A stretch of DNA of 64,000 nt, taken from positions 124,001 through 188,000 of IMG/VR virus record IMGVR_UViG_3300023179_000009; one strand, written 5' to 3'. The number at the start of each line of letters is the position of its first letter. Within the stretch, counting starts at the first letter, position 1. Shown here in pieces: positions 2,081-48,767 of this stretch. A program made the position numbers and the translations under genes. Under the pieces are notes generated by a model. That model was given only the letters and a program-made list of their open reading frames with translations. It made no database searches and was not told the origin of the DNA.

Positions 2081-5000
2081 GTGCTACAAGAACGCCAGCA
2101 ACTTTTAAAACTGTGTGTTTCCTCTTTGGAAAAAAAAGGTTTTTCCGAGGATCAGAGATACAAAGACAGGCTCAAGAGAGAATTGAAAGAAATAGATGCC
2201 CAAGGAGAGCATGAGTATCTATTAAATTTACAAAATCAATTTCAATCAAAGGGATTGATTTTGCCTTATAATCAACATAATCTTCTTGTTTATTATCTTT
2301 TAGATTTGTGTAAAGATTTTGATATTGAAAAAGAATATGCTTGGTATCAAGGTGAGTTTCCAGATATTGATATCGATTATTTAAAAGATGTTCGTGATTA
2401 CATTAAACGTACTTGGGCCGCAGAAAATTTTGGTCAAGATAAAATTTGCGAGATTGGAACATATGGAACAAGTGGTATTAAATCGGCCATTTTAGATATG
2501 GCACGAGTCCATGACGCTGAAAAAGATAGAATTCAGGCTATTACAACAAAGATGTCCGACAAGGACGAAGATGGGCATGATTTAGAGTGGGAAAAAGCTT
2601 TAGAGACATACCCGGAATTTAAATCTTATTGTGAAGATCACTCAGAAGTTGCCGATGCAGCCAAAGCATTATTAGACAGAATACGCACAGGGGGCGTTCA
2701 CGCTGGTGGCTTAATTGTTGCTGATCGTCGTTTAGATGGATTTGTTCCACTTGAAGTTAGAATGGTGAACAAAGAAAATCCAAATGGGGTTATTTGCTCG
2801 GCTTGGACAGAAGGTTTGAACCGTCAAGATCTTGGCCCTGTGGGTTTGATTAAATTTGACTTGTTGGTAATTAGCAATTTAATGCAAATAGCCTTGGCTT
2901 GTGACCTTATAAAAAAAAGACACAGTATTGAAAAAATATGCGCCGCACCTAATCAATGGGATTTCTCCGATTTAAATTATCTCAATGACCCAAAAGCATT
3001 GGCCATGGCAGACAAGGGTGATTTAAAATGTATTTTTCAATTTGATAGCGAAGGCATAAGGAATCTGGTTAAACGTGGTGGGGTTTCTAGTTTTGATGAT
3101 TTAGCAGCTTACTCAGCCATTTACCGCCCAGGGCCTTTAAATATGTCGATGGACGTTCATTATTGTAAAAGAAAAAGAGGCGAAGAGCCTTATGAAATTC
3201 ACCCTTTAATGCAAAAGTCTCTTGCTAAGACTTACGGAATTTTGGTTTTTCAAGAACAAGTTATGGACATCTTGCGTGTTGTTGGTGAAATCCCAGACAT
3301 GCACACAGAGAAGGTCCGAAAAGCTATCTCTAAAAAGAAAATTAAAGATTTTATAAAATACAAAGAAATGTTTATTAAAAATGGACAAAAAAATTTAGGA
3401 GAAAGCGAAGAATATGTTGAGAATTTGTGGAGTACTATAGAAAGTTTTGCAGAATATGGTTTTAATAAAACTTTGACCGAAGATACTATAATAGATTGTG
3501 TTGATGGCTCTAAACAAATTAAACACATAGGTGTTGGCGACAAGGTTTATTGCATAAACGAAAAAGGAGAACGAGCAGAAACAGAAGTTGTAGCAGTTCA
3601 CGATCATGGCGTAATTGATGTTGTTGAAGTCACATTTGATGACGGGTACTCGGTGAAATGCACATTAGATCATAAATTTTTAACCGAAGAAGGGCAAATT
3701 CCACTTTGGAAAATTATTCAAGATAATTTGGTTGTGCTTAGTTCTCCGTTGGGAGAACAAAATGCCACAGAGAAAAAATTGGGAAGCAATTTGCGGAGAG
3801 ATTCTCGGCAACAGAAAAAAAATTATAGAACATCGCAAGAATTGTACAAAATGCAGAGAGATGTATTTGCAAAAGAGAACAGAAAAATACAATCACAAAT
3901 CTCATTGCGGAAAGAAATTTCCAACAAAACACAAACTAGCAGATCACTTGAAAGAATGTCAGGACTGTATTTATTTGAAATGGCGAGAGACAGGAAAGAA
4001 ACACATATCTCGATGCGGGATAGAATTTTTGAGATACAGTTTGTTGGCGGAACACCATCGTCATTGTGCGAAATGCACGGAAATAAAAAAAGAGAACATT
4101 CAAAATCGGATGGACAAGTTAAACAAAGACAACCTGTCTCCAGATCGCAAGGCTATATTTTCTGCAACTGCCAAGAAAACTTCGGCAAGGAAAGATGTTC
4201 AAGAAGCAAGATCTGCACAATTAAAAAGATGGAGGGACAACAACCCAGAAGAGTTTGCGAGATCTATAGAAAAGGCACAACATGCTCCCAAAAAATCAAA
4301 AATGGAAACGTGGTTGAGAAAATATCTGGGATGGAAGCCGAAGAAAATATGTTGTGGGAAAGACAGGAAATTTGTGGATTTAGTAAAGAAAAATATTTGG
4401 ATAGAGGTGGACGGACCGTTCCACTTTTGGCAGGTCGGATCAAAATCGAACAAAAGAGGTCACAATTTAAACTATGTTCAACTCAGAGACCAGATGCTCA
4501 AAGAGGAGTGTTTGAGGAGACAAGATATAATGCTTTTGAGATTGAGCATGACTTGTTTTCACAAAAAAACAGGAGAAATGAAGAAGGAAAGTTTGGATTT
4601 GTTCCAGACTATGCTCCGATCTCCAATACCGGGGATTTGGTGCATAGGAAAGTTCTACGAATTGTGCCCGTGGGCAAAAGACAATGTTACGATCTTGAAG
4701 TTGCTGTAAGCACACATAACTTTATTTTGCCAAATGGGGTTGTCACATCGAATAGCCACTCTTATGCATACACTTATATATCGGCAAGGCTTCTTTGGCT
4801 AAAGGCGCATTATCCTCTTGAGTTCTACGCTGCTATTTTGATGTGTGAAACCGATACGGATAAAATAAAAGATTACAAGATCGATGCCGAGAAGCATGGA
4901 ATTGAAGTTTTGCCTATTCATATAAATTATTCTAAAGAAAATTTTACTATTCACGATAACAAAATATATTTTGGTTTTTCCAATATTAAATCTATAGGAG

Positions 5001-27089: not shown

Positions 27090-27803
27090 ATGGGATTTAA
27101 AAAAAGAAAATCTGCAAATTTAAAAAACGAAAAAAATAAAAACGCAAAAAACACCAAACCGATTAAAGTTCCTCAATCCAATTCAAATTTTCATATTGAA
27201 TTTAAGAATAAAATTCAAAACGAAGCTTGGGCGGCTTTTCAAAAATTTGATGTTCTTTTTTTGCTAGGATCAGCAGGTACAGGCAAAACTTTTTTAGCTA
27301 GCGCTTTTGCAATAGAACAAATATTAAATAATAAAAGAAATAAAATTATTTTGACTAGACCCATTGTAGAAGCCGGTGAGTCTTTAGGTTTTTTACCTGG
27401 AGAGTTTTCTGAAAAGGTGCATCCTTATATGATACCTCTTTATGATTGCATGGATCAAATGGTTGGATCTCATGGGCCTTGGAGAGAAAAAATAGACCAA
27501 GCCGTTGAGGTGGCTCCTATAGCTTTTATGCGTGGTCGTTCATTTTTAAATTCTATTTGTATTTTTGATGAAGCACAAAATGCTTCTCTTTTGCAATTAA
27601 AATTATTTCTTACTCGCTTTGGGGAAAATAGTAAAATTATCATCACAGGAGATCCGACTCAAAGCGATATTGGTAACAAAGTTGCTTTGGTAGATGTTGT
27701 TCAAAAATTAAGAGGACTAGATGGTGTTGGTGTTATAGAATTTAATAATGATTGTATAGTTAGACATCCTTTAGTTGGTAAAATAATTGATAGATTAGGT
27801 TAA
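27090..27803 (+). CDS. phoH: PhoH family ATPase
   Basis: GSAGTGKT, TRPIVEAGESLGFLPG, MRGRSF, IFDEAQN, ITGDPTQSD, VRHPLV. Confidence 0.95.
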   Translation: MGFKKRKSANLKNEKNKNAKNTKPIKVPQSNSNFHIEFKNKIQNEAWAAFQKFDVLFLLGSAGTGKTFLASAFAIEQILNNKRNKIILTRPIVEAGESLGFLPGEFSEKVHPYMIPLYDCMDQMVGSHGPWREKIDQAVEVAPIAFMRGRSFLNSICIFDEAQNASLLQLKLFLTRFGENSKIIITGDPTQSDIGNKVALVDVVQKLRGLDGVGVIEFNNDCIVRHPLVGKIIDRLG

Positions 27804-34672: not shown

Positions 34673-35566
34673 ATGGTTTCTGCAACTTTAAAATTCAATA
34701 AATTAAAGAAAAATCAAAAACATGCTGTTTTGACTGAAGCCGAACAGCGTCTAAAAAGAATATTTTTTCACGAAGACTTTGAAAAACCCGCAGAGATCAA
34801 AAAAATTCTTGGACCCATGCCAGATTCCTCAATCTTCGCAGAAGAATTAAGATCAGTAAGATCAAAATATTGTTTTGGCGGCAACAATTTTCAATCTCGT
34901 ATTTTTTATGAAAGTCCTTTGTTAACGAAGGAACAAGAAACTCATTTGTTTAAAAAATACAATTTTTACAAGTACAGAGCAAAAAAAAGATTACACAGAA
35001 AAGAAATCACGGACTCTCTCAGAGATCTTGTTTTGGCTGAAGACGTTAGAAACACTATAGCCGCAGCAAACCTGAGATTGTGTGTTCCCGTTGTCAAAAA
35101 GATGGGAGAAACCCAAAGACTTGATGATTTATTTTCAGAAGGCTGCGATTTGATCCTGAAGTCTGTTGACTACTTTGACCCAAACAGGGGTTTTAAGTTT
35201 TCTACTTACGCAACTTGGGTTCTAAAAAGAAATCTCTACAGAGCCTTAAAATCGTGGCGCAACTTTGAAGAAAGAAACTCTACTTGTTTGAACGAATCTG
35301 GCACCCAAGAAGCCGTTTTTAATCATGATTTTGAAGTAGTTTTTGAACAAACAGATAGGCTTTTAGTTATTAAAAAATTGTTGAATCTTTGCAACGAAAG
35401 AGAAAAAAAAGTTATAGAAAGACGATTTTTTGAGTCTAAAAAACTAATTGATATAGCCTCGGAGTTTGGGCTTTCTAAAGAAAGAATTCGCCAAATTGAA
35501 ACAAGGGCTTTGGAAAAAATGCACCGACAATGTGAACGGATTGGGATTTCTTTTGATTGCTTTTGA
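34673..35566 (+). CDS. Sigma-70 family RNA polymerase sigma factor
   Basis: Region 1.2 PLLTKEQE, region 2 AANLRL...DLFSEG...FDPNRGFKFSTYATW, region 4 SKERIRQIE; AAGGAGG RBS. Confidence 0.93.
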   Translation: MVSATLKFNKLKKNQKHAVLTEAEQRLKRIFFHEDFEKPAEIKKILGPMPDSSIFAEELRSVRSKYCFGGNNFQSRIFYESPLLTKEQETHLFKKYNFYKYRAKKRLHRKEITDSLRDLVLAEDVRNTIAAANLRLCVPVVKKMGETQRLDDLFSEGCDLILKSVDYFDPNRGFKFSTYATWVLKRNLYRALKSWRNFEERNSTCLNESGTQEAVFNHDFEVVFEQTDRLLVIKKLLNLCNEREKKVIERRFFESKKLIDIASEFGLSKERIRQIETRALEKMHRQCERIGISFDCF

Positions 35567-35853: not shown

Positions 35854-35915
35854 TTATTCCATATTGACATTTTGAAAAAAATTATACAATACAACCAACT
35901 GTGGAGAAAAAACTA

Positions 35916-37511
35916 ATGTCCAATAGTAATATTTTTTCAACTAAAACCAAAAAAACTGGGTTTTCTACAAATACAAAAAACAATGCTGGAGGCGATGCTT
36001 ATGAATTTGATCCAAAACATTGTTTGGCTCAAATCGCTGCCACAAACACATTTAGTGGAACTTTTTATGCAACCGCAGAGCAAAATTTTAATTTAGCCAA
36101 AGAATCTGCATTGCGTTTGAAACACGACCCAGAATTCATTGCAAAAGTTGCAATTTATTCTCGTGATAAGTCCTACATGAAAGACATGCCTTGCTTCCTG
36201 ACGGTGTTGCTCTCGGATATTAGCAAGCCTTTGTTTCGCAAAGTTTTTCGTCGTGTGGTTGATAATGGGAAAATGCTTCGAAATGTTATTCAAATGGCTC
36301 GAAGTGGAGTTGTAACCGGAAAAAAAGTTAATGTATCGGCAGGAAGTTGGAGGCACGCCATACAAGAGTGGTTTAATACTCAAAGTTCTTCTAGTATTTT
36401 TAAAGCTTCTATAGGCAACAATCCAACCATGCACGACATTTTAAGAATGTCGCACCCAAAACCAAATTCAATTGAAAAACAATCTTTGTTCGCTTACCTC
36501 TCAGGCAAAGAATTCGATTTTGAAAAACTTCCAGATCAAGTTAAAAAACTTCAAGAATTTAAATCAGGCAAATCAAAAGATATCCCTGATGTCGATTTTA
36601 GATTTTTAGACTCTTTGAATCTTGGTCAAAAAGAGTGGGAAACAATCGCTATTCAATCTCCTTGGCAAATGACAAGGATGAATCTTTTAACTTTTGCTAG
36701 ACATAATGTTTTTGCAAATGAAGATGTTATTCAAATCGTGGCAAATAAATTAAAAGACAAAAAATTAATTAAAAAGTCTCGTGCGTTTCCATACCAATTA
36801 TTCGCTGCTTGGAGACAAGTTGAGAATCAAGTTAATTATTGGATACCTGAAATAATTAAATCATCACTCGAAGAGGCTATGGAAGTTGCCATCGACAATG
36901 TCCCAGAAATCCCTGGAAAGGGTCTGGTCTGTGTGGACTGCTCTGGATCCATGACTTCACCAATAACCGGTTTTAGAAACCACAGGAGTAACTCTAGTGT
37001 ATCTTGCAGCGACGTTGCTGGACTTTTAGCTTCAGCCATACATCGAAAAAACAAATCTGTTGAGGTTTGGACTTTTTCGGATAGTGCCAACATGGTTGAA
37101 TTAGACCTTAAAGACAATGTGCTAAAAAACACAGAAAAATTAAATCGTGCTGGCGGGGGAACCAATATATCGGCACCAATGCACCGTTTCAATTCAGACT
37201 TCAAAAACGCTGATTGGATTTTATATGTATCAGACTATGAGTCTTGGATTGACTCGCCATCTGCTGGTTACGGTTATAACTCAACGGGTCTGTCCTATGA
37301 ATGGGACATTTTTAAGAAAAGAAACAATCACGCTAAATTAATTTGTTGTGATTTGACCCCTAGAGATAACTCTCAAATTTCTGTTAGAAAAGATGTTCTT
37401 CAAGTCGGAGGATTCTCAGATCAAGTTTTTGATGTCGTTTCTTCTTTTGTTTCTCAATCTAAAAGCAAAGATTTTTGGGTTGAAGAAATAAATAAAATAT
37501 CTTTGGACTAA
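35916..37511 (+). CDS. Ro60/Rsr-like TROVE-vWA RNA-binding protein
   Basis: NNAGGDAY, GTFYA, KDMP, PWQMTRMNL, SRAFPYQLF, vWA VDCSGSM, GGTNIS, VSDYESW, VGGFSDQVF; GGAG RBS 9 nt before ATG. Confidence 0.92.
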   Translation: MSNSNIFSTKTKKTGFSTNTKNNAGGDAYEFDPKHCLAQIAATNTFSGTFYATAEQNFNLAKESALRLKHDPEFIAKVAIYSRDKSYMKDMPCFLTVLLSDISKPLFRKVFRRVVDNGKMLRNVIQMARSGVVTGKKVNVSAGSWRHAIQEWFNTQSSSSIFKASIGNNPTMHDILRMSHPKPNSIEKQSLFAYLSGKEFDFEKLPDQVKKLQEFKSGKSKDIPDVDFRFLDSLNLGQKEWETIAIQSPWQMTRMNLLTFARHNVFANEDVIQIVANKLKDKKLIKKSRAFPYQLFAAWRQVENQVNYWIPEIIKSSLEEAMEVAIDNVPEIPGKGLVCVDCSGSMTSPITGFRNHRSNSSVSCSDVAGLLASAIHRKNKSVEVWTFSDSANMVELDLKDNVLKNTEKLNRAGGGTNISAPMHRFNSDFKNADWILYVSDYESWIDSPSAGYGYNSTGLSYEWDIFKKRNNHAKLICCDLTPRDNSQISVRKDVLQVGGFSDQVFDVVSSFVSQSKSKDFWVEEINKISLD

Positions 37512-37512
37512 T

Positions 37513-37540
37513 TTGACAATTCGAAAATTTACCGTAAAAT
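37513..37540 (+). promoter_or_regulatory. Sigma-70-type promoter for the RNA cluster
   Basis: TTGACA (37513)-N16-TAAAAT (37535), 6 nt before the tRNA-like RNA. Confidence 0.65.
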
Positions 37541-37546
37541 AAATTT

Positions 37547-37634
37547 AGACAAGTAGCTCAATGGCAGAGTCCGTCATTGTAAGAAGGTTTGCACCTTTGG
37601 ACGGAGGTTGCAGGTTCAATTCCTGTCTTGTCTT
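37547..37634 (+). tRNA. tRNA-like RNA (Thr-UGU-like loop) with 17-nt hairpin insertion in the anticodon arm
   Basis: Acceptor AGACAAG/CTTGTCT, D arm GCTC-AATGGCA-GAGT, stem CCGTC/GACGG enclosing 24 nt, T arm GCAGG-TTCAATT-CCTGT; no CCA. Confidence 0.75.
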
Positions 37635-37636
37635 TT

Positions 37637-37702
37637 TAGCGGAATGCCGTTGTGGTCCACATCACTACTGGAAAGATGACTATAACAATAAGTTGTCCGC
37701 TA
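37637..37702 (+). ncRNA. Y-RNA-like RNA 1
   Basis: Terminal stem TAGCGGA/TCCGCTA, inner stem GTTGTGGTC/GACTATAAC followed by a bulged C (Ro60-site-like GGUC-C/GACU), 3' U tract; downstream of Ro60. Confidence 0.75.
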
Positions 37703-37718
37703 TTTTTTTTGTTTAATT

Positions 37719-37781
37719 TGAGGAATGCCGAACAGGTCTACATCAAAAGGTTTAATGAACTTGTTCAAAATTTTGTCCTCA
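37719..37781 (+). ncRNA. Y-RNA-like RNA 2 (paralog of RNA 1)
   Basis: TGAGGA/TCCTCA and GAACAGGT/ACTTGTTC stems; shares GGAATGCCG, GGTCyACATC and TGTCC with RNA 1; 3' U tract. Confidence 0.7.
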
Positions 37782-37797
37782 TTTTTGGAGAAAAATT

Positions 37798-38214
37798 GTG
37801 AAAAATAAAATTTATCTTGTTGTTTCTTTAATTCTGGGCTTATTTTTTGTTTTCTTTATTTCTAATTTAGAAAACAAAAAATCTAATTCTAATTCATTGA
37901 TTAATAAAAAAACTCAGCAAGAAAATAATTTTGTTGTTGAAATAAACAATAAAATAGATGAATCAAAAATTTATGAGATTGCCTATCAAAGAGGATACAA
38001 TTCTTTTATGAGACAAGTGGGAAGACCAGATCTTGTTCACAACGGCAACAATAATGAAAAAATTGAGATGTATACATCAAATATAATTGAAGAGATGTCA
38101 GAGGAAGAAAAACAAAAAATAGAAAAAATATCTGCCAAAGCTTATGTCGATGGATATCATAAAGCAGGCGATTCCACCGTTTGTCCTAGATTCAAAGAAG
38201 CAAGACACAATTAA
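37798..38214 (+). CDS. Membrane-anchored hypothetical protein
   Basis: GTG with GGAG RBS; N-terminal TM helix. Confidence 0.65.
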   Translation: MKNKIYLVVSLILGLFFVFFISNLENKKSNSNSLINKKTQQENNFVVEINNKIDESKIYEIAYQRGYNSFMRQVGRPDLVHNGNNNEKIEMYTSNIIEEMSEEEKQKIEKISAKAYVDGYHKAGDSTVCPRFKEARHN

Positions 38215-39982: not shown

Positions 39983-40897
39983 ATGAACACTGAATGGACT
40001 CCAGATTTTCCAGTTTATGTTTATTATAAAGACATGAAACTTCCGGATAGTGGCAATTATTTTGTGATTGCTGGCAATGGTTGCTGGATGCACAAAGACA
40101 CAGGTTTGTGTAAGTGTTTTATACCAGTCGATAGAATTAGTTTTTTAGACGATCTTAAAACTGACCTAAGATTAGAGTTTAACTTGCCAAAAATACCACC
40201 AGATTTGGTTTGGCAAGTTAAACAATTTTTCAAAATTGTTTTCGATAATTTTTCGTCAGAGGCAGAGGTTAATTTATTATTTAATAAAAAAGAAAATAAG
40301 TTTAAGATCCATGTGCCAGAGCAAATTGTTAGCCACACTAGTGTGAAATATAAACGTTGGAGTTCAAACCAATCAGAGGATTTAAAAGATTATTTATTTG
40401 TTGGAACTTTTCATTCACATAGTGACTTTGATTCATTTCATAGTCACACGGATGTTCAAGATGAGACACATCTGGATGGTGTTCATTTTACTTTTGGCAA
40501 TAACGATAAAAAAGAGTTTAGTATAACTGCAAGTATAGTTATAAATGGATTTAGAAAAGAAGTAGATCCTTTAAATTTCTTACAAGGAATTCAAAATTCG
40601 GACCTTGAAGAAAGATTCATTTTTATTAATCATAAAAATGAAAAACAGGATGAACTGTTGCAAGAAGTTAACGATTGGTTAGAAAATGTAAAACCTTTAA
40701 ATAATAAGTATCTAAAAAAACAATACGCACACTGGAAAGACGGTATGTTTTCTTCCACCCTCAGGAACCATTTTGGCAATGGTCCTTTTGAGGTTTTGTC
40801 AAAAAAAGAAGACAAAATATCACTTAAATCATTGAATGGTGGTGCATTTGAATTATCAAATAAACTTTTTGAAATAAGGTCAAAAGATGGAAAATAA
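39983..40897 (+). CDS. JAB/MPN+ deconjugating metallopeptidase
   Basis: SEAEV (Glu) and GTFHSHSDFDSFHSHTDVQDE (HxH-x7-S-xx-D). Confidence 0.85.
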   Translation: MNTEWTPDFPVYVYYKDMKLPDSGNYFVIAGNGCWMHKDTGLCKCFIPVDRISFLDDLKTDLRLEFNLPKIPPDLVWQVKQFFKIVFDNFSSEAEVNLLFNKKENKFKIHVPEQIVSHTSVKYKRWSSNQSEDLKDYLFVGTFHSHSDFDSFHSHTDVQDETHLDGVHFTFGNNDKKEFSITASIVINGFRKEVDPLNFLQGIQNSDLEERFIFINHKNEKQDELLQEVNDWLENVKPLNNKYLKKQYAHWKDGMFSSTLRNHFGNGPFEVLSKKEDKISLKSLNGGAFELSNKLFEIRSKDGK

Positions 40898-41597
40898 TAT
40901 AGAAAAAATTAAAATCATAGGTCTGGGCGGAATTGGCTCCTATCTTTTAGATCCAATCTCTAGGTATCTGTCTTGCTCCGAAAAACAATATGAGATAACT
41001 TTTATCGATGGTGATTTTTATGAAGAAAAAAATTTAAATAGACAAAACTTTAGTTTATTTCAAAATAAAGCAAAGGATGCATTCGAGAGAATGCAAAGCG
41101 TTTTTAAAAACATTCACTTTAAATACAAGCCAGAATATGTAAACGAAGACAATGTGGTGTCTTTAATAAGAAATAATGATATAATATTTTTATGTGTAGA
41201 TAATCACTCCACCAGAAAAACTGTATCGGATAGGTGCAAAGAATTAGATAATGTTGTTTTGATAAGTGGAGGAAATGATTTAATAGATGGGAATGTTATA
41301 ATTTATATTAGAAAAAACTCAGTAGATATCACACGATCCTTAACGGATTTGGATCCAAGAATACACAACCCAAAAGACAGCAATCCTTCAACTTTGAAAA
41401 ATAATAGTGGTTGCCAAAATTCTACCCAATCCGAACCTCAATTGCTTTTCACAAATTTTGCCGTTGCCTCCACTATGCTGAACTGTTTTAGAAGATACGA
41501 AAATAACGATGTGAATTTTCATCAAGTTTATATTGATATACAAACTCTAAGAACTAGACCTTCACCAGAGGTAGAAATTGAAAAGAGGAATTTTTAA
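40887..41597 (+). CDS. ThiF/E1-like activating enzyme
   Basis: IIGLGGIGS, IDGDFYEEKNLNRQ, FLCVDN, ISGGND, candidate catalytic Cys in SGC. Confidence 0.9.
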   Translation: MENNIEKIKIIGLGGIGSYLLDPISRYLSCSEKQYEITFIDGDFYEEKNLNRQNFSLFQNKAKDAFERMQSVFKNIHFKYKPEYVNEDNVVSLIRNNDIIFLCVDNHSTRKTVSDRCKELDNVVLISGGNDLIDGNVIIYIRKNSVDITRSLTDLDPRIHNPKDSNPSTLKNNSGCQNSTQSEPQLLFTNFAVASTMLNCFRRYENNDVNFHQVYIDIQTLRTRPSPEVEIEKRNF

Positions 41598-41942
41598 ATG
41601 TCGCAAGAAAGAAGAACAGATCAAGGCGATCTAACAAACAAAAAAGATACCCTAGACTCCACCAAAGACAAAACCGAGATTGTTTTTTCTCAAGCAACAA
41701 AAACTGATTCTAAGGTAAGAGTTGTTCATGGGGCCAATCAAGAATATTTCAATTTAGCAGGAAAGACCGTGGGATCAGTTAGAAAAAATTTAAGAGAAAT
41801 TTTTAATATACCTAGCGATGCAGAGGCCCTCATCTCAGGAAACGCTGTTCCTGATGATTTTGTTCTTGAGGGCGGTCAATCTCTTGAATTTTTAAAAGAA
41901 AGTGGAGTAAAGGGTTTTGAAAAAATGTGCTTCTTTTATTGA
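41598..41942 (+). CDS. Ubiquitin-like (beta-grasp) protein with C-terminal extension
   Basis: VRVVHG...GKTVGSVR...FNIP...ALISG...VLEGGQSLEFLKESGVKG then FEKMCFFY. Confidence 0.75.
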   Translation: MSQERRTDQGDLTNKKDTLDSTKDKTEIVFSQATKTDSKVRVVHGANQEYFNLAGKTVGSVRKNLREIFNIPSDAEALISGNAVPDDFVLEGGQSLEFLKESGVKGFEKMCFFY

Positions 41943-42549
41943 AACTAGGATTGGTAATAATTATATTGATTCTATAAATAATCACCTTAGACACTTGTGT
42001 GGTTGGGATTTTTTTGTTTTAACTACAAAAAAATCTTGGAATAGTTTTTACAATTGCTTAAATTTAAAATTTAAATACATTAACGAAATAAAAGATTCAA
42101 ATGATTACAACAAAATGCTTACTAGTTTTGATTTTTGGAATTTTTTTGTGAAAAAAAAATATGATAGAGTTTTAATATGTCAACACGACTCTGGCTTGCT
42201 CTTAAATAACATTGATGATTATTTAGAGTATGATTATGTTGGATCCCCCTGGGATTTTCAAGAACATGGTGGCAATGGCGGCTTGTCTTTAAGGAATCCC
42301 AAAGTTATGAGGGATATATGTTCCAATTTTTTATTTGATACAAGTTATTTTAACGAAGACATCTTCTTCTGTGATATTATGTACAAACAAAAAATAGGAA
42401 ATATGGCCCCTAGAGAAGTTTGTAGAAAATTTTCTATGGAGGTAATACTAGAATTAAACACAACAGGATATCACGGTATTGAAAAATATCATCATCCAAA
42501 TGTGGTTGATACGATAAAGTCTCAAGAAATTATTTCTTCAAAACTTTAA
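41917..42549 (+). CDS. DUF5672-like (glycosyltransferase-like) protein
   Basis: VLICQHDS, YDYVGSPW, GGNGGLSLRN, NEDIFF, FSME, GYHG. Confidence 0.7.
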   Translation: MKKCASFIETRIGNNYIDSINNHLRHLCGWDFFVLTTKKSWNSFYNCLNLKFKYINEIKDSNDYNKMLTSFDFWNFFVKKKYDRVLICQHDSGLLLNNIDDYLEYDYVGSPWDFQEHGGNGGLSLRNPKVMRDICSNFLFDTSYFNEDIFFCDIMYKQKIGNMAPREVCRKFSMEVILELNTTGYHGIEKYHHPNVVDTIKSQEIISSKL

Positions 42550-46005: not shown

Positions 46006-46593
46006 ATGTATTTAATGATTATATCGTGTAGTTGGGATGATGGTACACGCTCAGACAAAAAATTAGTTAGATTATTAAACGAACTTGGTATTAAATCAAC
46101 TTTTTTCTTAGTTGGGAGACACTTTAATAAAGATTGGAAACAACTTTATCAAGGCCACGAAGTTGGCAACCACACGATGAATCATGTCAATCTTTTGAAA
46201 TGTAATTTTAAGGAAATTAAAAAAGAAATATCAGACTGTCAAAAATTGTTGGAAGACACCTTTCAGAAGAGAATAGTTGGTTTTTGTTATCCTTATGGCC
46301 ATCGATCCAACTATATTGATGATATTGTTTTTGAGCAAAATTTTCTTTACACTAGAACAACAAGAATTATTGATGAATTTAACCCAAAAAGAATAGATAG
46401 CCAATCTTGTTTTGATAATAAAAATAAATTTTGGCAAACTTATTATAATAAAAATAAATATTTTGTTTTTCACGGTCATTCGCAGAGAATTGTCAATGAA
46501 CCAAATTTAAGAGATAATTTTAAAAAGTTAGTTGAAGATAAAAATATTTTTGTCACACATGATAAAATTATTCAACTTAGAAATACAATTTAA
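46006..46593 (+). CDS. Polysaccharide deacetylase (NodB/CE4)
   Basis: SWDDG, KSTFF, HEVGNHTMNH, FCYPYG, FHGHS. Confidence 0.88.
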   Translation: MYLMIISCSWDDGTRSDKKLVRLLNELGIKSTFFLVGRHFNKDWKQLYQGHEVGNHTMNHVNLLKCNFKEIKKEISDCQKLLEDTFQKRIVGFCYPYGHRSNYIDDIVFEQNFLYTRTTRIIDEFNPKRIDSQSCFDNKNKFWQTYYNKNKYFVFHGHSQRIVNEPNLRDNFKKLVEDKNIFVTHDKIIQLRNTI

Positions 46594-48461: not shown

Positions 48462-48699
48462 AGATGCTCTTCTCGGCATCGGAACCAAAAAAGGATCGGA
48501 AGATTCTTTGGTCTATGATTATGATAAATGTGTAGAAATATTAATCGAGCGAGAAGGCATGTCGCACGAAGAAGCAATTGAGTGGATGGAATTTAATGTT
48601 GTAGACGCTTATGTTGGCCCGACTACCCCAATATTCGTTCACACGGACCCAGAATATACAATTCAATATATTCAATCTAATAGTGACGACATTGCCTAG
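48436..48699 (+). CDS. Conserved phage-type hypothetical protein
   Basis: ADGFEDALLG...VYDYDKCVEIL...GMSHEEAIEWMEFNVVDAYVGPTTPIF; 3' end overlaps tRNA-Cys. Confidence 0.75.
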   Translation: MLLQADGFEDALLGIGTKKGSEDSLVYDYDKCVEILIEREGMSHEEAIEWMEFNVVDAYVGPTTPIFVHTDPEYTIQYIQSNSDDIA

Positions 48700-48767
48700 T
48701 GGCGACGGCAACAGTCTGCAAAACTGTCGAGGAAACTCCATCGTGGGTTCGAGTCCCACTGTCGTCT
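48685..48767 (+). tRNA. tRNA-Cys(GCA) with long variable arm
   Basis: GACGACA/TGTCGTC acceptor, U73, ACAGT-CTGCAAA-ACTGT, variable region CGAGGAAACTCCATC, GTGGG-TTCGAGT-CCCAC. Confidence 0.88.

What the first reader, a model, noticed from the sequence alone, without database searches (positions are those of the whole stretch)
37637..37786. Two paralogous Y-RNA-like RNAs with compensatory base changes
Seen: both share GGA-ATGCC-G...GGTC(C/T)ACATC...ATGA...TGTCC, while both stems change sequence but keep pairing: AGCGGA/TCCGCT vs TGAGGA/TCCTCA, and GTTGTGGTC/GACTATAAC vs GAACAGGT/ACTTGTTC. RNA 1 has GGUC-bulged C opposite GACU. Known: that bulged helix is the Ro60-binding element of Y RNAs. Inference: a compact (about 65 nt) Y RNA class with a conserved AUGCC internal loop. 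RNA 2 alters the bulge (U instead of C) and may bind differently.
Basis: partly seen in the sequence, partly recalled or inferred. Interest (0 to 1): 0.82.

Follow-up and report, generated by a model that had tools for sequence, protein, structure and literature searches.

The report
Two short phage Y RNAs beside Ro60
A 459-kb freshwater phage carries, right after its Ro60 gene, a tRNA-like RNA and two ~65-nt Y RNAs of the short bacterial YrlB type; this is a real but known kind of RNA partner for the RNA-surveillance protein Ro60.

Summary
Window 37637-37702 and 37719-37781 are two paralogous hairpin RNAs on the + strand. They lie 126 nt downstream of a Ro60/TROVE gene (35916-37511) in a 458.8-kb phage genome, and they are the only two copies in that genome.

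A covariance model seeded on them finds over 400 homologues in about 140 Ro60 loci of phages and bacteria. Every hit is on the Ro60 strand and the covariation is strong. The same model also recovers the Rfam-validated Salmonella YrlB and YrlA. So these are short, YrlB-type Y RNAs made of little more than the conserved Ro60-binding module: outer stem, AAUGC loop, inner stem, UACAU, CUUG. Rfam's own models miss them.

- The AUGC loop is a known YrlA/YrlB feature.
- The bulge is U in 99-100% of the family, so RNA1's C is the outlier, not RNA2's U.
- GGUC is not conserved.

They are not mere terminators. An 88-nt tRNA-Thr-derived tRNA-like RNA with its own promoter directly abuts RNA1. Family-wide, Y RNAs abut tRNAs, which suggests maturation by RNase P and RNase Z. 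Verdict: new members of a known kind. No expression data could be obtained.

The parts
35916..37511 (+). Ro60/TROVE (Rsr-like) protein gene. The ATG at 35916 matches homologue N-termini; the longest ORF starts at GTG 35901.
   Evidence: Pfam vWA_Ro60 2.9e-12 and TROVE 1.5e-10. PDB sequence matches to phage phiLo Ro60, X. laevis and human Ro60, and D. radiodurans Rsr. Homologue alignment A2.
37513..37540 (+). Sigma-70-like promoter, TTGACA-16 nt-TAAAAT, ending 6 nt before the tRNA-like RNA.
   Evidence: It is the best site in the region, matching 11 of 12 positions. It is conserved as TTGACA-16-TACAAT in L003 while the spacer varies. Function is inferred.
37547..37634 (+). 88-nt tRNA-like RNA derived from tRNA-Thr(UGU), with a 17-nt hairpin inserted in the anticodon loop. 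It ends 1-2 nt before RNA1.
   Evidence: Rfam tRNA 43.7 bits. ARAGORN. Cloverleaf MFE fold. Closest to the phage's own canonical tRNA-Thr(UGU). The L003 orthologue has anticodon UGC and a compensatory U-A to C-G change in the insert hairpin.
37637..37710 (+). Y RNA 1, short YrlB type: a 66-nt hairpin at 37637-37702 plus a U8 tail.
   Evidence: CM R1 72 bits, R2 56 bits. Structure. The orthologue in L003 has a compensatory change in the inner stem.
37719..37786 (+). Y RNA 2, short YrlB type: a 63-nt hairpin at 37719-37781 plus a U5 tail.
   Evidence: CM R1 28.3 bits, R2 46.5 bits. 98% identical to its L003 orthologue, against 82% for the Ro60 gene.
37644..37648 (+). AAUGC(C) 5' side of the conserved internal loop in RNA1. 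The RNA2 equivalent is 37725-37729.
   Evidence: A 96-100%, U 100%, G 90-99%, C 89-98% across families A7 and A8. Present in the Rfam YrlA and YrlB consensus.
37658..37663 (+). C-ACAUC after the inner stem in RNA1. The RNA2 equivalent, U-ACAUC, is 37739-37744.
   Evidence: The family consensus UACAU is 96-100% conserved. C at the first position occurs in about 1% of members.
37693..37695 (+). UUG on the 3' side of the internal loop, directly before the outer stem in RNA1. The RNA2 equivalent is 37773-37775.
   Evidence: The CUUG consensus has U 94-100% and G 96-100%. Present in the Rfam YrlA and YrlB consensus.

Best explanation
Positions 37513-37786 form a small non-coding RNA operon of a huge freshwater phage, placed directly after its Ro60 gene.

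A sigma-70-type promoter drives three RNAs in a row: an 88-nt tRNA-like RNA, then two ~65-nt Y RNAs. Each Y RNA is essentially the bare Ro60/Rsr-binding module of the bacterial YrlA/YrlB lineage. That module is a terminal stem formed by the 5' and 3' ends, an asymmetric internal loop (AAUGC opposite A-rich...CUUG), a second stem, the conserved UACAU, and a short, weakly structured A-rich apical loop.

The proposed mechanism is as follows. Both RNAs bind the phage Ro60 ring, as YrlB, YrlA and phage phiLo Yrl1/Yrl2 bind theirs. Binding stabilises or gates Ro60 and may couple it to a host exoribonuclease such as PNPase. The 5' end of RNA1 is probably made by tRNA 3'-end processing (RNase Z or an equivalent) of the abutting tRNA-like RNA. 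The 3' ends are set by the terminal stem plus U-run acting as an intrinsic terminator.

What is shown: sequence, structure, covariation, synteny, strand bias, and family membership by model cross-detection. What is inferred: transcription, processing, Ro60 binding and biological role.
For: - A Ro60 gene lies immediately upstream on the same strand.
- There are only two copies of the module in the whole 458,813-bp phage genome, both here.
- A model seeded on RNA1 and three related RNAs gives 57 hits. The rebuilt model gives 126 hits in 61 viral sources and 277 in 80 bacterial Ro60 loci. All hits are on the Ro60 strand and none on the other.
- Covariation is strong. 93-94.5% of cells are paired against 57-60% in shuffles; the covariation score is 0.82-0.90 against 0.19-0.22; slid controls give 0.07-0.16; 16 of 16 pairs show double changes.
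- RNAalifold independently predicts the same two stems, with 15 of 15 pairs compensatory.
- The same model detects the Salmonella YrlB at 41.2 bits and YrlA at 31.1 bits. Rfam scores these above its gathering thresholds, at 105.5 and 70.9 bits.
- The Rfam YrlA and YrlB consensus shows the same AAUGC...UACAU...UUGUC layout.
- The RNA genes are better conserved than the flanking coding DNA between the two closest phages: tRNA-like 94%, RNA2 98%, RNA1 85%, against 82% for the Ro60 gene and about 74% for neighbours. Substitutions in stems are compensatory, and all indels have lengths that are not multiples of three.
- The promoter is conserved.
- Y RNAs abut tRNAs far more often than chance: 36 upstream and 23 downstream, against 4.1 and 3.7 under random placement.
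- There is precedent for phage Ro60 binding two phage-encoded Y-like RNAs and host PNPase (PMC12135203), and for RNase P processing of a Y RNA (PMC4201824).
Against: - There is no expression or binding evidence. Four freshwater metatranscriptomes gave no contig on the locus.
- Rfam YrlA, YrlB and Y_RNA models give no hit on these RNAs even at E<=10.
- The published GNCGAA(N)G motif is not matched exactly: the window has GGAAUG because the closing pair is flipped.
- Single-sequence folding z-scores are modest.
- The covariation alignments were fitted to the model, which inflates pairing somewhat. The slid controls and RNAalifold mitigate this.
- The apical loops are short and not conserved, so a tethering role has no visible effector-binding module.
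Confidence: 0.85

Rival explanations
1. The tRNA-like RNA and RNA1 are not separated. Together they form one ~155-nt composite Y RNA in which a tRNA-mimic effector domain sits 5' of the Ro60-binding hairpin. This would be functionally like YrlA but with a third topology. RNA2 would then be the only free short Y RNA.
For: - Only 1-2 nt separate the tRNA-like discriminator (37634) from RNA1.
- The window has no YrlA-type long form, so the tRNA-like RNA could supply the missing tRNA-mimic module.
- In related phages, tRNA-shaped RNAs that do carry the Ro module sit in the same position, directly 5' of a short Y RNA (L009 4370-4499 | 4502; L018 4833-4973 | 4973).
Against: - The tRNA-like RNA has a canonical 7-bp acceptor stem, elbow nucleotides and a U-rich trailer, which are the usual determinants for RNase P and RNase Z cleavage (established knowledge).
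- In many loci ordinary tRNAs abut Y RNAs in the same way, which fits punctuation better than fusion.
- No transcript data are available.
Confidence: 0.15
2. The two hairpins are simply tandem intrinsic terminators for the Ro60 and tRNA-like transcription unit, with no trans-acting role.
For: Both end in a stem followed by a U-run, U8 and U5. They lie between convergently ending and starting units.
Against: - Unpaired motifs (AAUGC, UACAU, CUUG) are 90-100% conserved across phyla, which a terminator does not need.
- Only 19 of 69 viral and 13 of 66 bacterial short homologues are followed by a U-run.
- The homologues of the L004 group include copies without a U-run.
- The module is shared with Rsr-bound YrlB and YrlA.
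- The terminator scan did not flag them.
Confidence: 0.03
3. They are cis-regulatory or antisense elements, for example a leader of the downstream ORF 37798-38214 or RNAs read from the - strand.
For: The reverse complement of RNA2 folds with z = -3.2. RNA2 ends 12 nt before the next ORF.
Against: - All of the more than 400 family hits are on the Ro60 strand.
- The commonest pair at one conserved stem position is G-U (88 of 123), which cannot form on the opposite strand.
- In other loci the downstream neighbours differ: tRNAs, other Y RNAs, or unrelated genes.
Confidence: 0.02

Closest known systems
Salmonella Typhimurium YrlB (Rfam RF02565), the short Rsr-bound Y RNA
   Same: Same architecture and motifs: terminal stem, GAAUGC loop, inner stem ending GGAU/GGUC, UA, CAUC, short apical loop, A/U-rich...UUG, terminal stem. 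It is encoded just downstream of rsr on the same strand. The model built from the phage RNAs scores it at 41.2 bits, E 1e-10.
   Different: The window RNAs are shorter (63-66 nt against ~78 nt). They lack the 6-nt 3' bulge and the extra basal helix of YrlB. The Rfam YrlB model does not detect them even at E<=10. They are phage-encoded and present in two copies. The host operon context (rtcBA) is absent.
YrlA (Rfam RF02553), the widespread bacterial Y RNA with a tRNA-like domain
   Same: It has an identical Ro60-binding module, with AAUGC, UAC and CUUGUC in the consensus. It occurs in the same loci as the short forms and is hit by the same model.
   Different: YrlA carries a circularly permuted tRNA-like domain (T arm, closed acceptor stem, D arm) in place of the apical loop. 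The window RNAs have none. Only 4 of 135 short forms contain a T-loop motif, against 75 of 125 long forms. In the window the tRNA-like element is a separate, normally ordered gene upstream.
Thermus phage phiLo Ro60 with Yrl1 and Yrl2 (PMC12135203)
   Same: A phage-encoded Ro60 with two phage-encoded Y-like RNAs next to the gene. Binding and a Ro60-Y RNA-PNPase complex were shown experimentally there.
   Different: phiLo Ro60 is only about 25% identical. Its Yrls lie upstream and were defined by a CGAA motif. I did not compare the sequences directly.
Vertebrate Y RNAs (Rfam RF00019)
   Same: A terminal stem formed by the 5' and 3' ends carries the Ro60 site, and the RNA has a 3' U-run. RNA1 by itself resembles the GGUC / bulged C / GACU helix.
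   Different: The resemblance is not conserved in the family: the bulge is U and is followed by ACAU, and GGUC is variable. There is no Rfam Y_RNA hit. The transcription machinery differs, being bacterial-type promoter and terminator.

Membership tests
Bacterial/phage Y RNA, YrlA/YrlB lineage | Encoded within a few kb of a Ro60/Rsr gene and on the same strand | tested here: met
   RNA1 starts 126 nt after the Ro60 stop codon, on the same strand. These are the only two module copies in the 459-kb genome.
Bacterial/phage Y RNA, YrlA/YrlB lineage | 5' and 3' ends pair into a long stem, interrupted by the conserved AAUGC / CUUG internal loop and followed by UAC(AU) | tested here: met
   Structure. 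Covariation. Motif frequencies. The same layout appears in the Rfam consensus.
Bacterial/phage Y RNA, YrlA/YrlB lineage | GNCGAAN0-1G motif near the 5' end (Chen et al. 2014, PMC4201824) | tested here: inconclusive
   The window has GCGGAAUG and GAGGAAUG. The C is G because the closing pair is G-C rather than C-G. In the family that position is C in 61-83% of members and covaries with its partner.
Bacterial/phage Y RNA, YrlA/YrlB lineage | Scores above the Rfam gathering threshold for RF02553 or RF02565 | tested here: not met
   No YrlA or YrlB hit even at E<=10 on 166-501 nt. Related loci give sub-threshold hits.
Bacterial/phage Y RNA, YrlA/YrlB lineage | Homology to RNAs shown experimentally to bind Rsr | tested here: met
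   Model R2, built only from phage RNAs seeded on RNA1, detects the Salmonella-type YrlB (E 1.3e-10) and YrlA (E 1.3e-7). Rfam scores both above threshold.
Bacterial/phage Y RNA, YrlA/YrlB lineage | Physical binding to Ro60 and dependence on Ro60 for accumulation | not testable with these tools
   Needs EMSA, RIP or northern blots.
YrlA subfamily | Internal tRNA-like domain (T arm, closed acceptor stem, D arm) | tested here: not met
   The apical regions are 20-22 nt and unstructured, with MFE above 0. They contain no T-loop motif. The RNAs are therefore of the YrlB type, not YrlA.
Vertebrate-type Y RNA (RF00019) | Conserved GGUCCGA helix with a bulged C | tested here: not met
   Only RNA1 has GGUC-C. 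The family consensus is GG(A/U)(C/U)-U-ACAU. No RF00019 hit.
Intrinsic terminator | G+C-rich hairpin with a short loop followed by a U-run | tested here: inconclusive
   U8 and U5 follow the terminal stems, but the scan does not call them. Most homologues lack a U-run. Termination is likely a secondary role here.
Decoding tRNA (applied to the element at 37547-37634) | 7-nt anticodon loop, anticodon conserved among orthologues, and synthetase identity elements | tested here: not met
   - The cloverleaf and elbow are present.
- The anticodon loop carries a 17-nt hairpin insert.
- The anticodon is UGU here but UGC in the 84%-related phage.
- The acceptor pairs are A1-U72 and G2-C71, where the phage's canonical tRNA-Thr has G1-C72 and C2-G71.
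- That those pairs are ThrRS identity elements rests on my own knowledge.

The most novel reading that the evidence does not exclude
The locus may be a 'split' or rearranged YrlA. The tRNA-mimic part is a separate, normally ordered, tRNA-Thr-derived gene, and the Ro60-binding part is reduced to bare 65-nt hairpins. The two would either remain fused as a tandem composite RNA or be cut apart by RNase P and RNase Z.

More generally, Y RNAs of this lineage may be matured as passengers of tRNA arrays ('tRNA-punctuated' Y RNA operons). They also appear to exist in at least three topologies: YrlA-type permuted, tRNA-ordered with the Ro module as the anticodon arm (seen in L009 and L018), and bare hairpins. 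As far as I know, neither the tRNA-ordered form nor the punctuated arrays have been described.
Probability: 0.3. Interest if true: 0.6.

Novelty: new member of a known kind. Interest (0 to 1): 0.45.

Why it matters
Ro60-Y RNA particles are a conserved RNA-surveillance system and a human autoantigen. Bacterial and phage versions are the tractable models for it.

These two RNAs are close to a minimal natural Ro60-binding module of about 63-66 nt. That makes them good substrates for structural work on how bacterial-type Ro60 recognises the AAUGC / UACAU / CUUG elements, which has not been resolved.

About half of the more than 270 aligned module copies are such short forms, and current Rfam models miss them. 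The catalogue of bacterial and phage Y RNAs is therefore incomplete, and a better model is easy to build.

The tight tRNA-Y RNA adjacency offers a testable route to Y RNA biogenesis. For phage biology it adds a huge-phage example of a Ro60 RNP that may redirect host RNA decay.

Tried and rejected
1. Rfam scans of the window, at gathering threshold and at E<=10 on 501 nt and on 166 nt. Only the tRNA hit appeared; there was no Y_RNA, YrlA or YrlB hit.
2. My own regex-plus-pairing descriptor. The strict version missed RNA2 because of its 3' A bulge. The version that tolerated bulges was too permissive (785 forward hits against 279 reverse and 471 shuffled). I abandoned it for Infernal models.
3. 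MAFFT alignment of nine short RNAs misaligned the 3' halves. The seed was reduced to four sequences with a hand-written structure.
4. Expression evidence. DNA runs from freshwater and lake metagenomes hold the locus. The four metatranscriptomes offered gave no contig on it, so transcription and RNA ends are unverified.
5. The idea that the window's tRNA-like RNA hides a circularly permuted Ro module, as in L009 and L018. Its insert has UUG, but there is no AAUGC and no UACAU, and the model gives no hit there. Rejected.
6. The idea that the 17-nt insert is an archaeal-type intron. The predicted fold has no bulge-helix-bulge. Rejected on structure.
7. The idea that the apical loops of RNA1 or RNA2 base-pair in trans with the tRNA-like insert (they share an AAGGUUU heptamer). 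Duplex energies are no better than for shuffled loops, with 163-496 of 500 shuffles as good or better. Rejected.
8. Myxococcus phage Mx1 is the best cultured-phage Ro60 match at 40% identity. It has no detectable module within 2.5 kb. Loci L013 and L014 likewise have none.
9. A metagenome scan for intermediate relatives found none between 84% and 49% Ro60 identity.

Full report
**Where the finding lies**

The window is bases 124001-188000 of a 458,813-bp IMG/VR virus record that CheckV rates 91% complete. This is a huge phage with about 33% G+C. It is found in lake and freshwater metagenomes.

The finding's coordinates, 37637-37786, sit just downstream of an ORF at 35901/35916-37511 on the + strand. 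That ORF matches Pfam vWA_Ro60 (2.9e-12) and TROVE (1.5e-10). By sequence it also matches solved Ro60 structures: Thermus phage phiLo, Xenopus and human Ro60, and D. radiodurans Rsr. It is the only TROVE gene in the phage.

**The observation**

Both RNAs have the same layout.

| Element | RNA1 | RNA2 |
|---|---|---|
| Outer stem | 37637-43 / 37696-702, 7 bp | 37719-24 / 37776-81, 6 bp |
| AAUGCC | 37644-48 | 37725-29 |
| Inner stem | 37649-57 / 37678-86, 9 bp | 37730-37 / 37759-66, 8 bp |
| Single nucleotide after the inner stem | C (37658) | U (37739) |
| ACAUC | 37659-63 | 37740-44 |
| A-rich 3' loop ending in UUG, then U-run | U8 | U5 |

Each RNA also has a 10-12-nt apical region between ACAUC and the 3' strand of the inner stem.

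- The two copies differ on both sides of 2 outer-stem and 4 inner-stem pairs and keep the pairing.
- The shared 23-nt pattern occurs twice, against 0 in 100 shuffles.
- Single-sequence folding recovers the stems but with modest z-scores of -2.3 and -1.3.

**Homologues**

The Ro60 protein retrieved five related viral loci, then 62 viral loci, then 80 bacterial loci (mostly Acidobacteriota and Verrucomicrobiota MAGs), then 80 metagenome loci. Reading the DNA after the Ro60 gene in the first loci showed the same motif order in every one.

I built and searched covariance models in three steps:
- A model was built from RNA1, its orthologue in L003 and two RNAs of L004, using only the two stems as structure. 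It gave 57 hits in the viral loci, all on the Ro60 strand. RNA2 was among them at 28 bits.
- The model rebuilt from those hits gave 126 hits in 61 viral sources and 277 in 80 bacterial loci, again all on the + strand.
- In the whole phage genome it finds only RNA1 (56 bits) and RNA2 (46.5 bits).

**Covariation**

| Measure | A6 alignment | A7 alignment |
|---|---|---|
| Cells forming standard pairs | 94.5% (shuffles 60.1%) | 93.1% (shuffles 56.8%) |
| Covariation score | 0.82 (shuffles 0.19) | 0.90 (shuffles 0.22) |
| Slid controls | 0.07-0.13 | 0.10-0.16 |
| Pairs with changes on both sides | 16 of 16 | 16 of 16 |

These alignments were fitted to the model, which favours the structure. However, RNAalifold predicts the same two stems on its own, with 15 of 15 pairs compensatory.

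One stem position is G-U in 88 of 123 sequences. This fixes the strand as +.

**What they are**

The Rfam consensus of YrlA reads: outer stem, AAUGC, inner stem, CUAC, tRNA-like domain, AcUUGUC, outer stem. The Rfam consensus of Salmonella YrlB reads: GaAUGC, stem ending GGAU, UA, CAUc, short loop, gAUG, stem, AUUUGuC. The window RNAs have this layout.

I made a direct test on a 2.2-kb Salmonella-derived record that carries the 3' end of rsr:
- Rfam scores YrlB there at 105.5 bits and YrlA at 70.9 bits, both above threshold.
- My phage-derived model hits the same two RNAs at 41.2 and 31.1 bits.

YrlA and YrlB were defined as Rsr-bound RNAs in Salmonella (PMC4201824). The window RNAs therefore belong to that lineage.

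They lack any T or D arm. Their apical regions are 20-22 nt and have positive folding energy. So they are of the short YrlB type, not YrlA.

Hit lengths in the family are bimodal, at 60-85 nt and 100-160 nt. About half of the aligned hits are short: 69 of 126 viral and 66 of 150 bacterial. A T-loop motif occurs in 4 of 135 short forms and 75 of 125 long forms. Rfam's models do not detect the window RNAs even at E<=10.

Family-wide, the unpaired positions have these frequencies:

| Motif | Conservation |
|---|---|
| AAUGC | A 96-100%, U 100%, G 90-99%, C 89-98% |
| UACAU | U 99-100%, A 100%, C 100%, A 98-100%, U 96-99% |
| CUUG | U 94-100%, G 96-100% |

RNA1's C is the rare variant, and its orthologue in the closest phage has U.
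- The pairs before the bulge vary: A-U 68% or U-A 30%, then C-G, U-A or G-C. The GGUC/GACU resemblance to the vertebrate Ro site is therefore particular to this phage.
- After UA, a weak 3-bp CAU/AUG helix is about twice as frequent as in shuffled loops. This matches the CAUC/GAUG helix of YrlB.
- Chen et al. place the likely Rsr contact at GNCGAA(N)G, which is the end of the outer stem plus the AAUG loop. Sequence analysis cannot say which conserved element touches the protein.

**Not mere terminators**

Both window RNAs end in U-runs and probably do terminate transcription. However:
- Only 19 of 69 viral and 13 of 66 bacterial short homologues are followed by a U-run.
- The first short RNA of L004 has no U-run.
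- The conserved single-stranded motifs have no role in termination.

**The surroundings**

*Promoter.* Immediately after the Ro60 stop lies the best promoter-like site of the region: TTGACA-16-TAAAAT at 37513-37540, matching 11 of 12 positions. It is conserved in L003 while the spacer differs.

*tRNA-like RNA.* Six nucleotides after the promoter begins an 88-nt tRNA-like RNA (37547-37634).
- It scores 43.7 bits on Rfam tRNA. ARAGORN calls it Thr-UGU.
- It has a 7-bp acceptor stem and normal D and T arms, with a 17-nt hairpin inserted after the anticodon loop.
- It is most similar to the phage's own canonical 73-nt tRNA-Thr(UGU), which lies elsewhere in the genome.
- Its first two acceptor pairs are A-U and G-C, where the canonical tRNA has G-C and C-G.
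- In the 84%-related phage its anticodon is UGC, and the insert hairpin carries a compensatory U-A to C-G change.
- I therefore read it as a tRNA-derived structural RNA rather than a decoder. It ends 1-2 nt before RNA1.

*Conservation between the two phages*:

| Segment | DNA identity |
|---|---|
| tRNA-like RNA | 94% |
| RNA2 | 98% |
| RNA1 | 85% |
| Ro60 gene | 82% |
| Neighbouring ORFs | ~74% |

All four indels in the RNA region have lengths that are not multiples of three. This argues against the small overlapping ORFs listed.

**A wider pattern bearing on biogenesis**

ARAGORN finds 574 tRNAs in the 142 Ro60 loci, all on the Ro60 strand. Y-module hits abut a tRNA (gap -2 to 15 nt) 36 times upstream and 23 times downstream. 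Random placement gives 4.1 and 3.7, with maxima of 9 and 11 in 300 trials. L051, for example, alternates tRNA, Y RNA, tRNA, Y RNA with gaps of -1 to 4 nt.

This suggests co-transcription with tRNAs and release by RNase P and RNase Z. The window's tRNA-like / RNA1 junction fits that picture. Processing of a Y RNA by RNase P has a precedent in M. smegmatis. This step is an inference.

**Related loci also show a form I did not expect**

In L009 (4671-4836 and 4937-5100, with a compact version at 4370-4499) and in L018 (4833-4973, 5046-5181, 5183-5312) there are RNAs with an ordinary tRNA order and an open acceptor stem. Their anticodon arm is the Ro module turned inside out: inner-stem strand, CUUG, outer stem closed by a loop, AAU(G/A)C, inner-stem strand, UACAU, then the T arm.

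Unconstrained folding recovers the cloverleaf plus this arm, with z-scores of -1.9 to -3.9. These RNAs are circular permutations of YrlA and often sit directly 5' of a short Y RNA, where the window has its tRNA-like RNA. The window's tRNA-like RNA itself lacks AAUGC and UACAU.

**Mechanism**

The best-supported reading is that RNA1 and RNA2 are ligands of the phage Ro60 that occupy its Y RNA-binding surface. By analogy with D. radiodurans, Salmonella and phage phiLo, they would gate access to the ring and/or assemble it with a host exoribonuclease.

With such short apical loops, a gating or stabilising role seems more likely than tethering. Any tRNA-mimic function would fall to the separate tRNA-like RNA. 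Binding, processing and function are all inferred. No RNA data could be obtained.

**Novelty and score**

Bacterial Y RNAs, short Y RNAs (YrlB, Yrn2) and phage Ro60 with two Y-like RNAs are all published (PMC4201824, PMC12135203). TROVE proteins in some jumbo phages have also been noted (PMC7824862).

The finding is therefore a correct identification of new members of a known kind. Several modestly new aspects come with it:
- The RNAs are undetected by Rfam.
- They are minimal in size.
- They are paired with a stand-alone tRNA-derived RNA.
- They belong to a family whose short forms, tRNA-ordered forms and tRNA-punctuated arrays appear under-described.

Interest: 0.45.

Noticed in passing
window 37547-37634: An 88-nt tRNA-like RNA with a 17-nt hairpin inserted in the anticodon loop. 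It derives from the phage's own tRNA-Thr(UGU), whose canonical copy is at genome position 309512-309584, outside the window. In the closest phage the anticodon is UGC and the insert hairpin has a compensatory change. It is probably not a decoding tRNA.
   Followed up: yes
window 37513-37540: A near-consensus sigma-70-type promoter (TTGACA-16-TAAAAT) starts two bases after the Ro60 stop codon and ends 6 nt before the tRNA-like RNA. It is conserved in L003. The RNA genes therefore seem to have their own promoter rather than depending on Ro60 read-through.
   Followed up: partly
L051 600-2400 and 4170-4460; also L058, L080, L092, L097, L101, L118 (related Ro60 loci): Y RNAs alternate with ordinary tRNAs at gaps of -1 to ~10 nt. 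All 574 predicted tRNAs in the 142 Ro60 loci are on the Ro60 strand. Adjacency is about 6-9 times the random expectation. This suggests that Y RNAs are matured by RNase P and RNase Z as passengers of tRNA arrays.
   Followed up: partly
L009 4370-4499, 4671-4836, 4937-5100; L018 4833-4973, 5046-5181, 5183-5312: tRNA-ordered RNAs with an open acceptor stem, whose anticodon arm is the Ro60-binding module in circularly permuted order, with the outer stem capped by a loop. Relative to YrlA these are permuted. I do not know of a description of this form.
   Followed up: partly
L018 4973-5400: In this phage lineage the AAUGC loop motif is AAUAC or AAUAU in every copy. This is a lineage-wide G-to-A variant that may go with a change in its Ro60.
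   Followed up: no
L013/L014 1960-2440; L153 (Myxococcus phage Mx1): Some Ro60 loci have no detectable Y module within 2.5 kb. L013 instead has a cluster of odd T-arm-containing tRNA-like sequences just upstream of Ro60, one of them with a 12-nt insert.
   Followed up: no
window 34673-35566: A sigma-70 family protein gene (regions 2 and 4) lies about 330 nt upstream of Ro60 on the same strand.
   Followed up: no
window 39983-41597: Adjacent genes for a weak sub-threshold Prok-JAB-like domain match (23.6 bits against a 25-bit cutoff) and a ThiF/E1-like protein. There is also a PhoH-like ATPase at 27090-27803, a DUF5672 protein at 41917-42549 and a polysaccharide deacetylase at 46006-46593.
   Followed up: no
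window 48685-48767: The predicted tRNA-Cys(GCA) is 83 nt, longer than usual for tRNA-Cys. I did not examine it.
   Followed up: no
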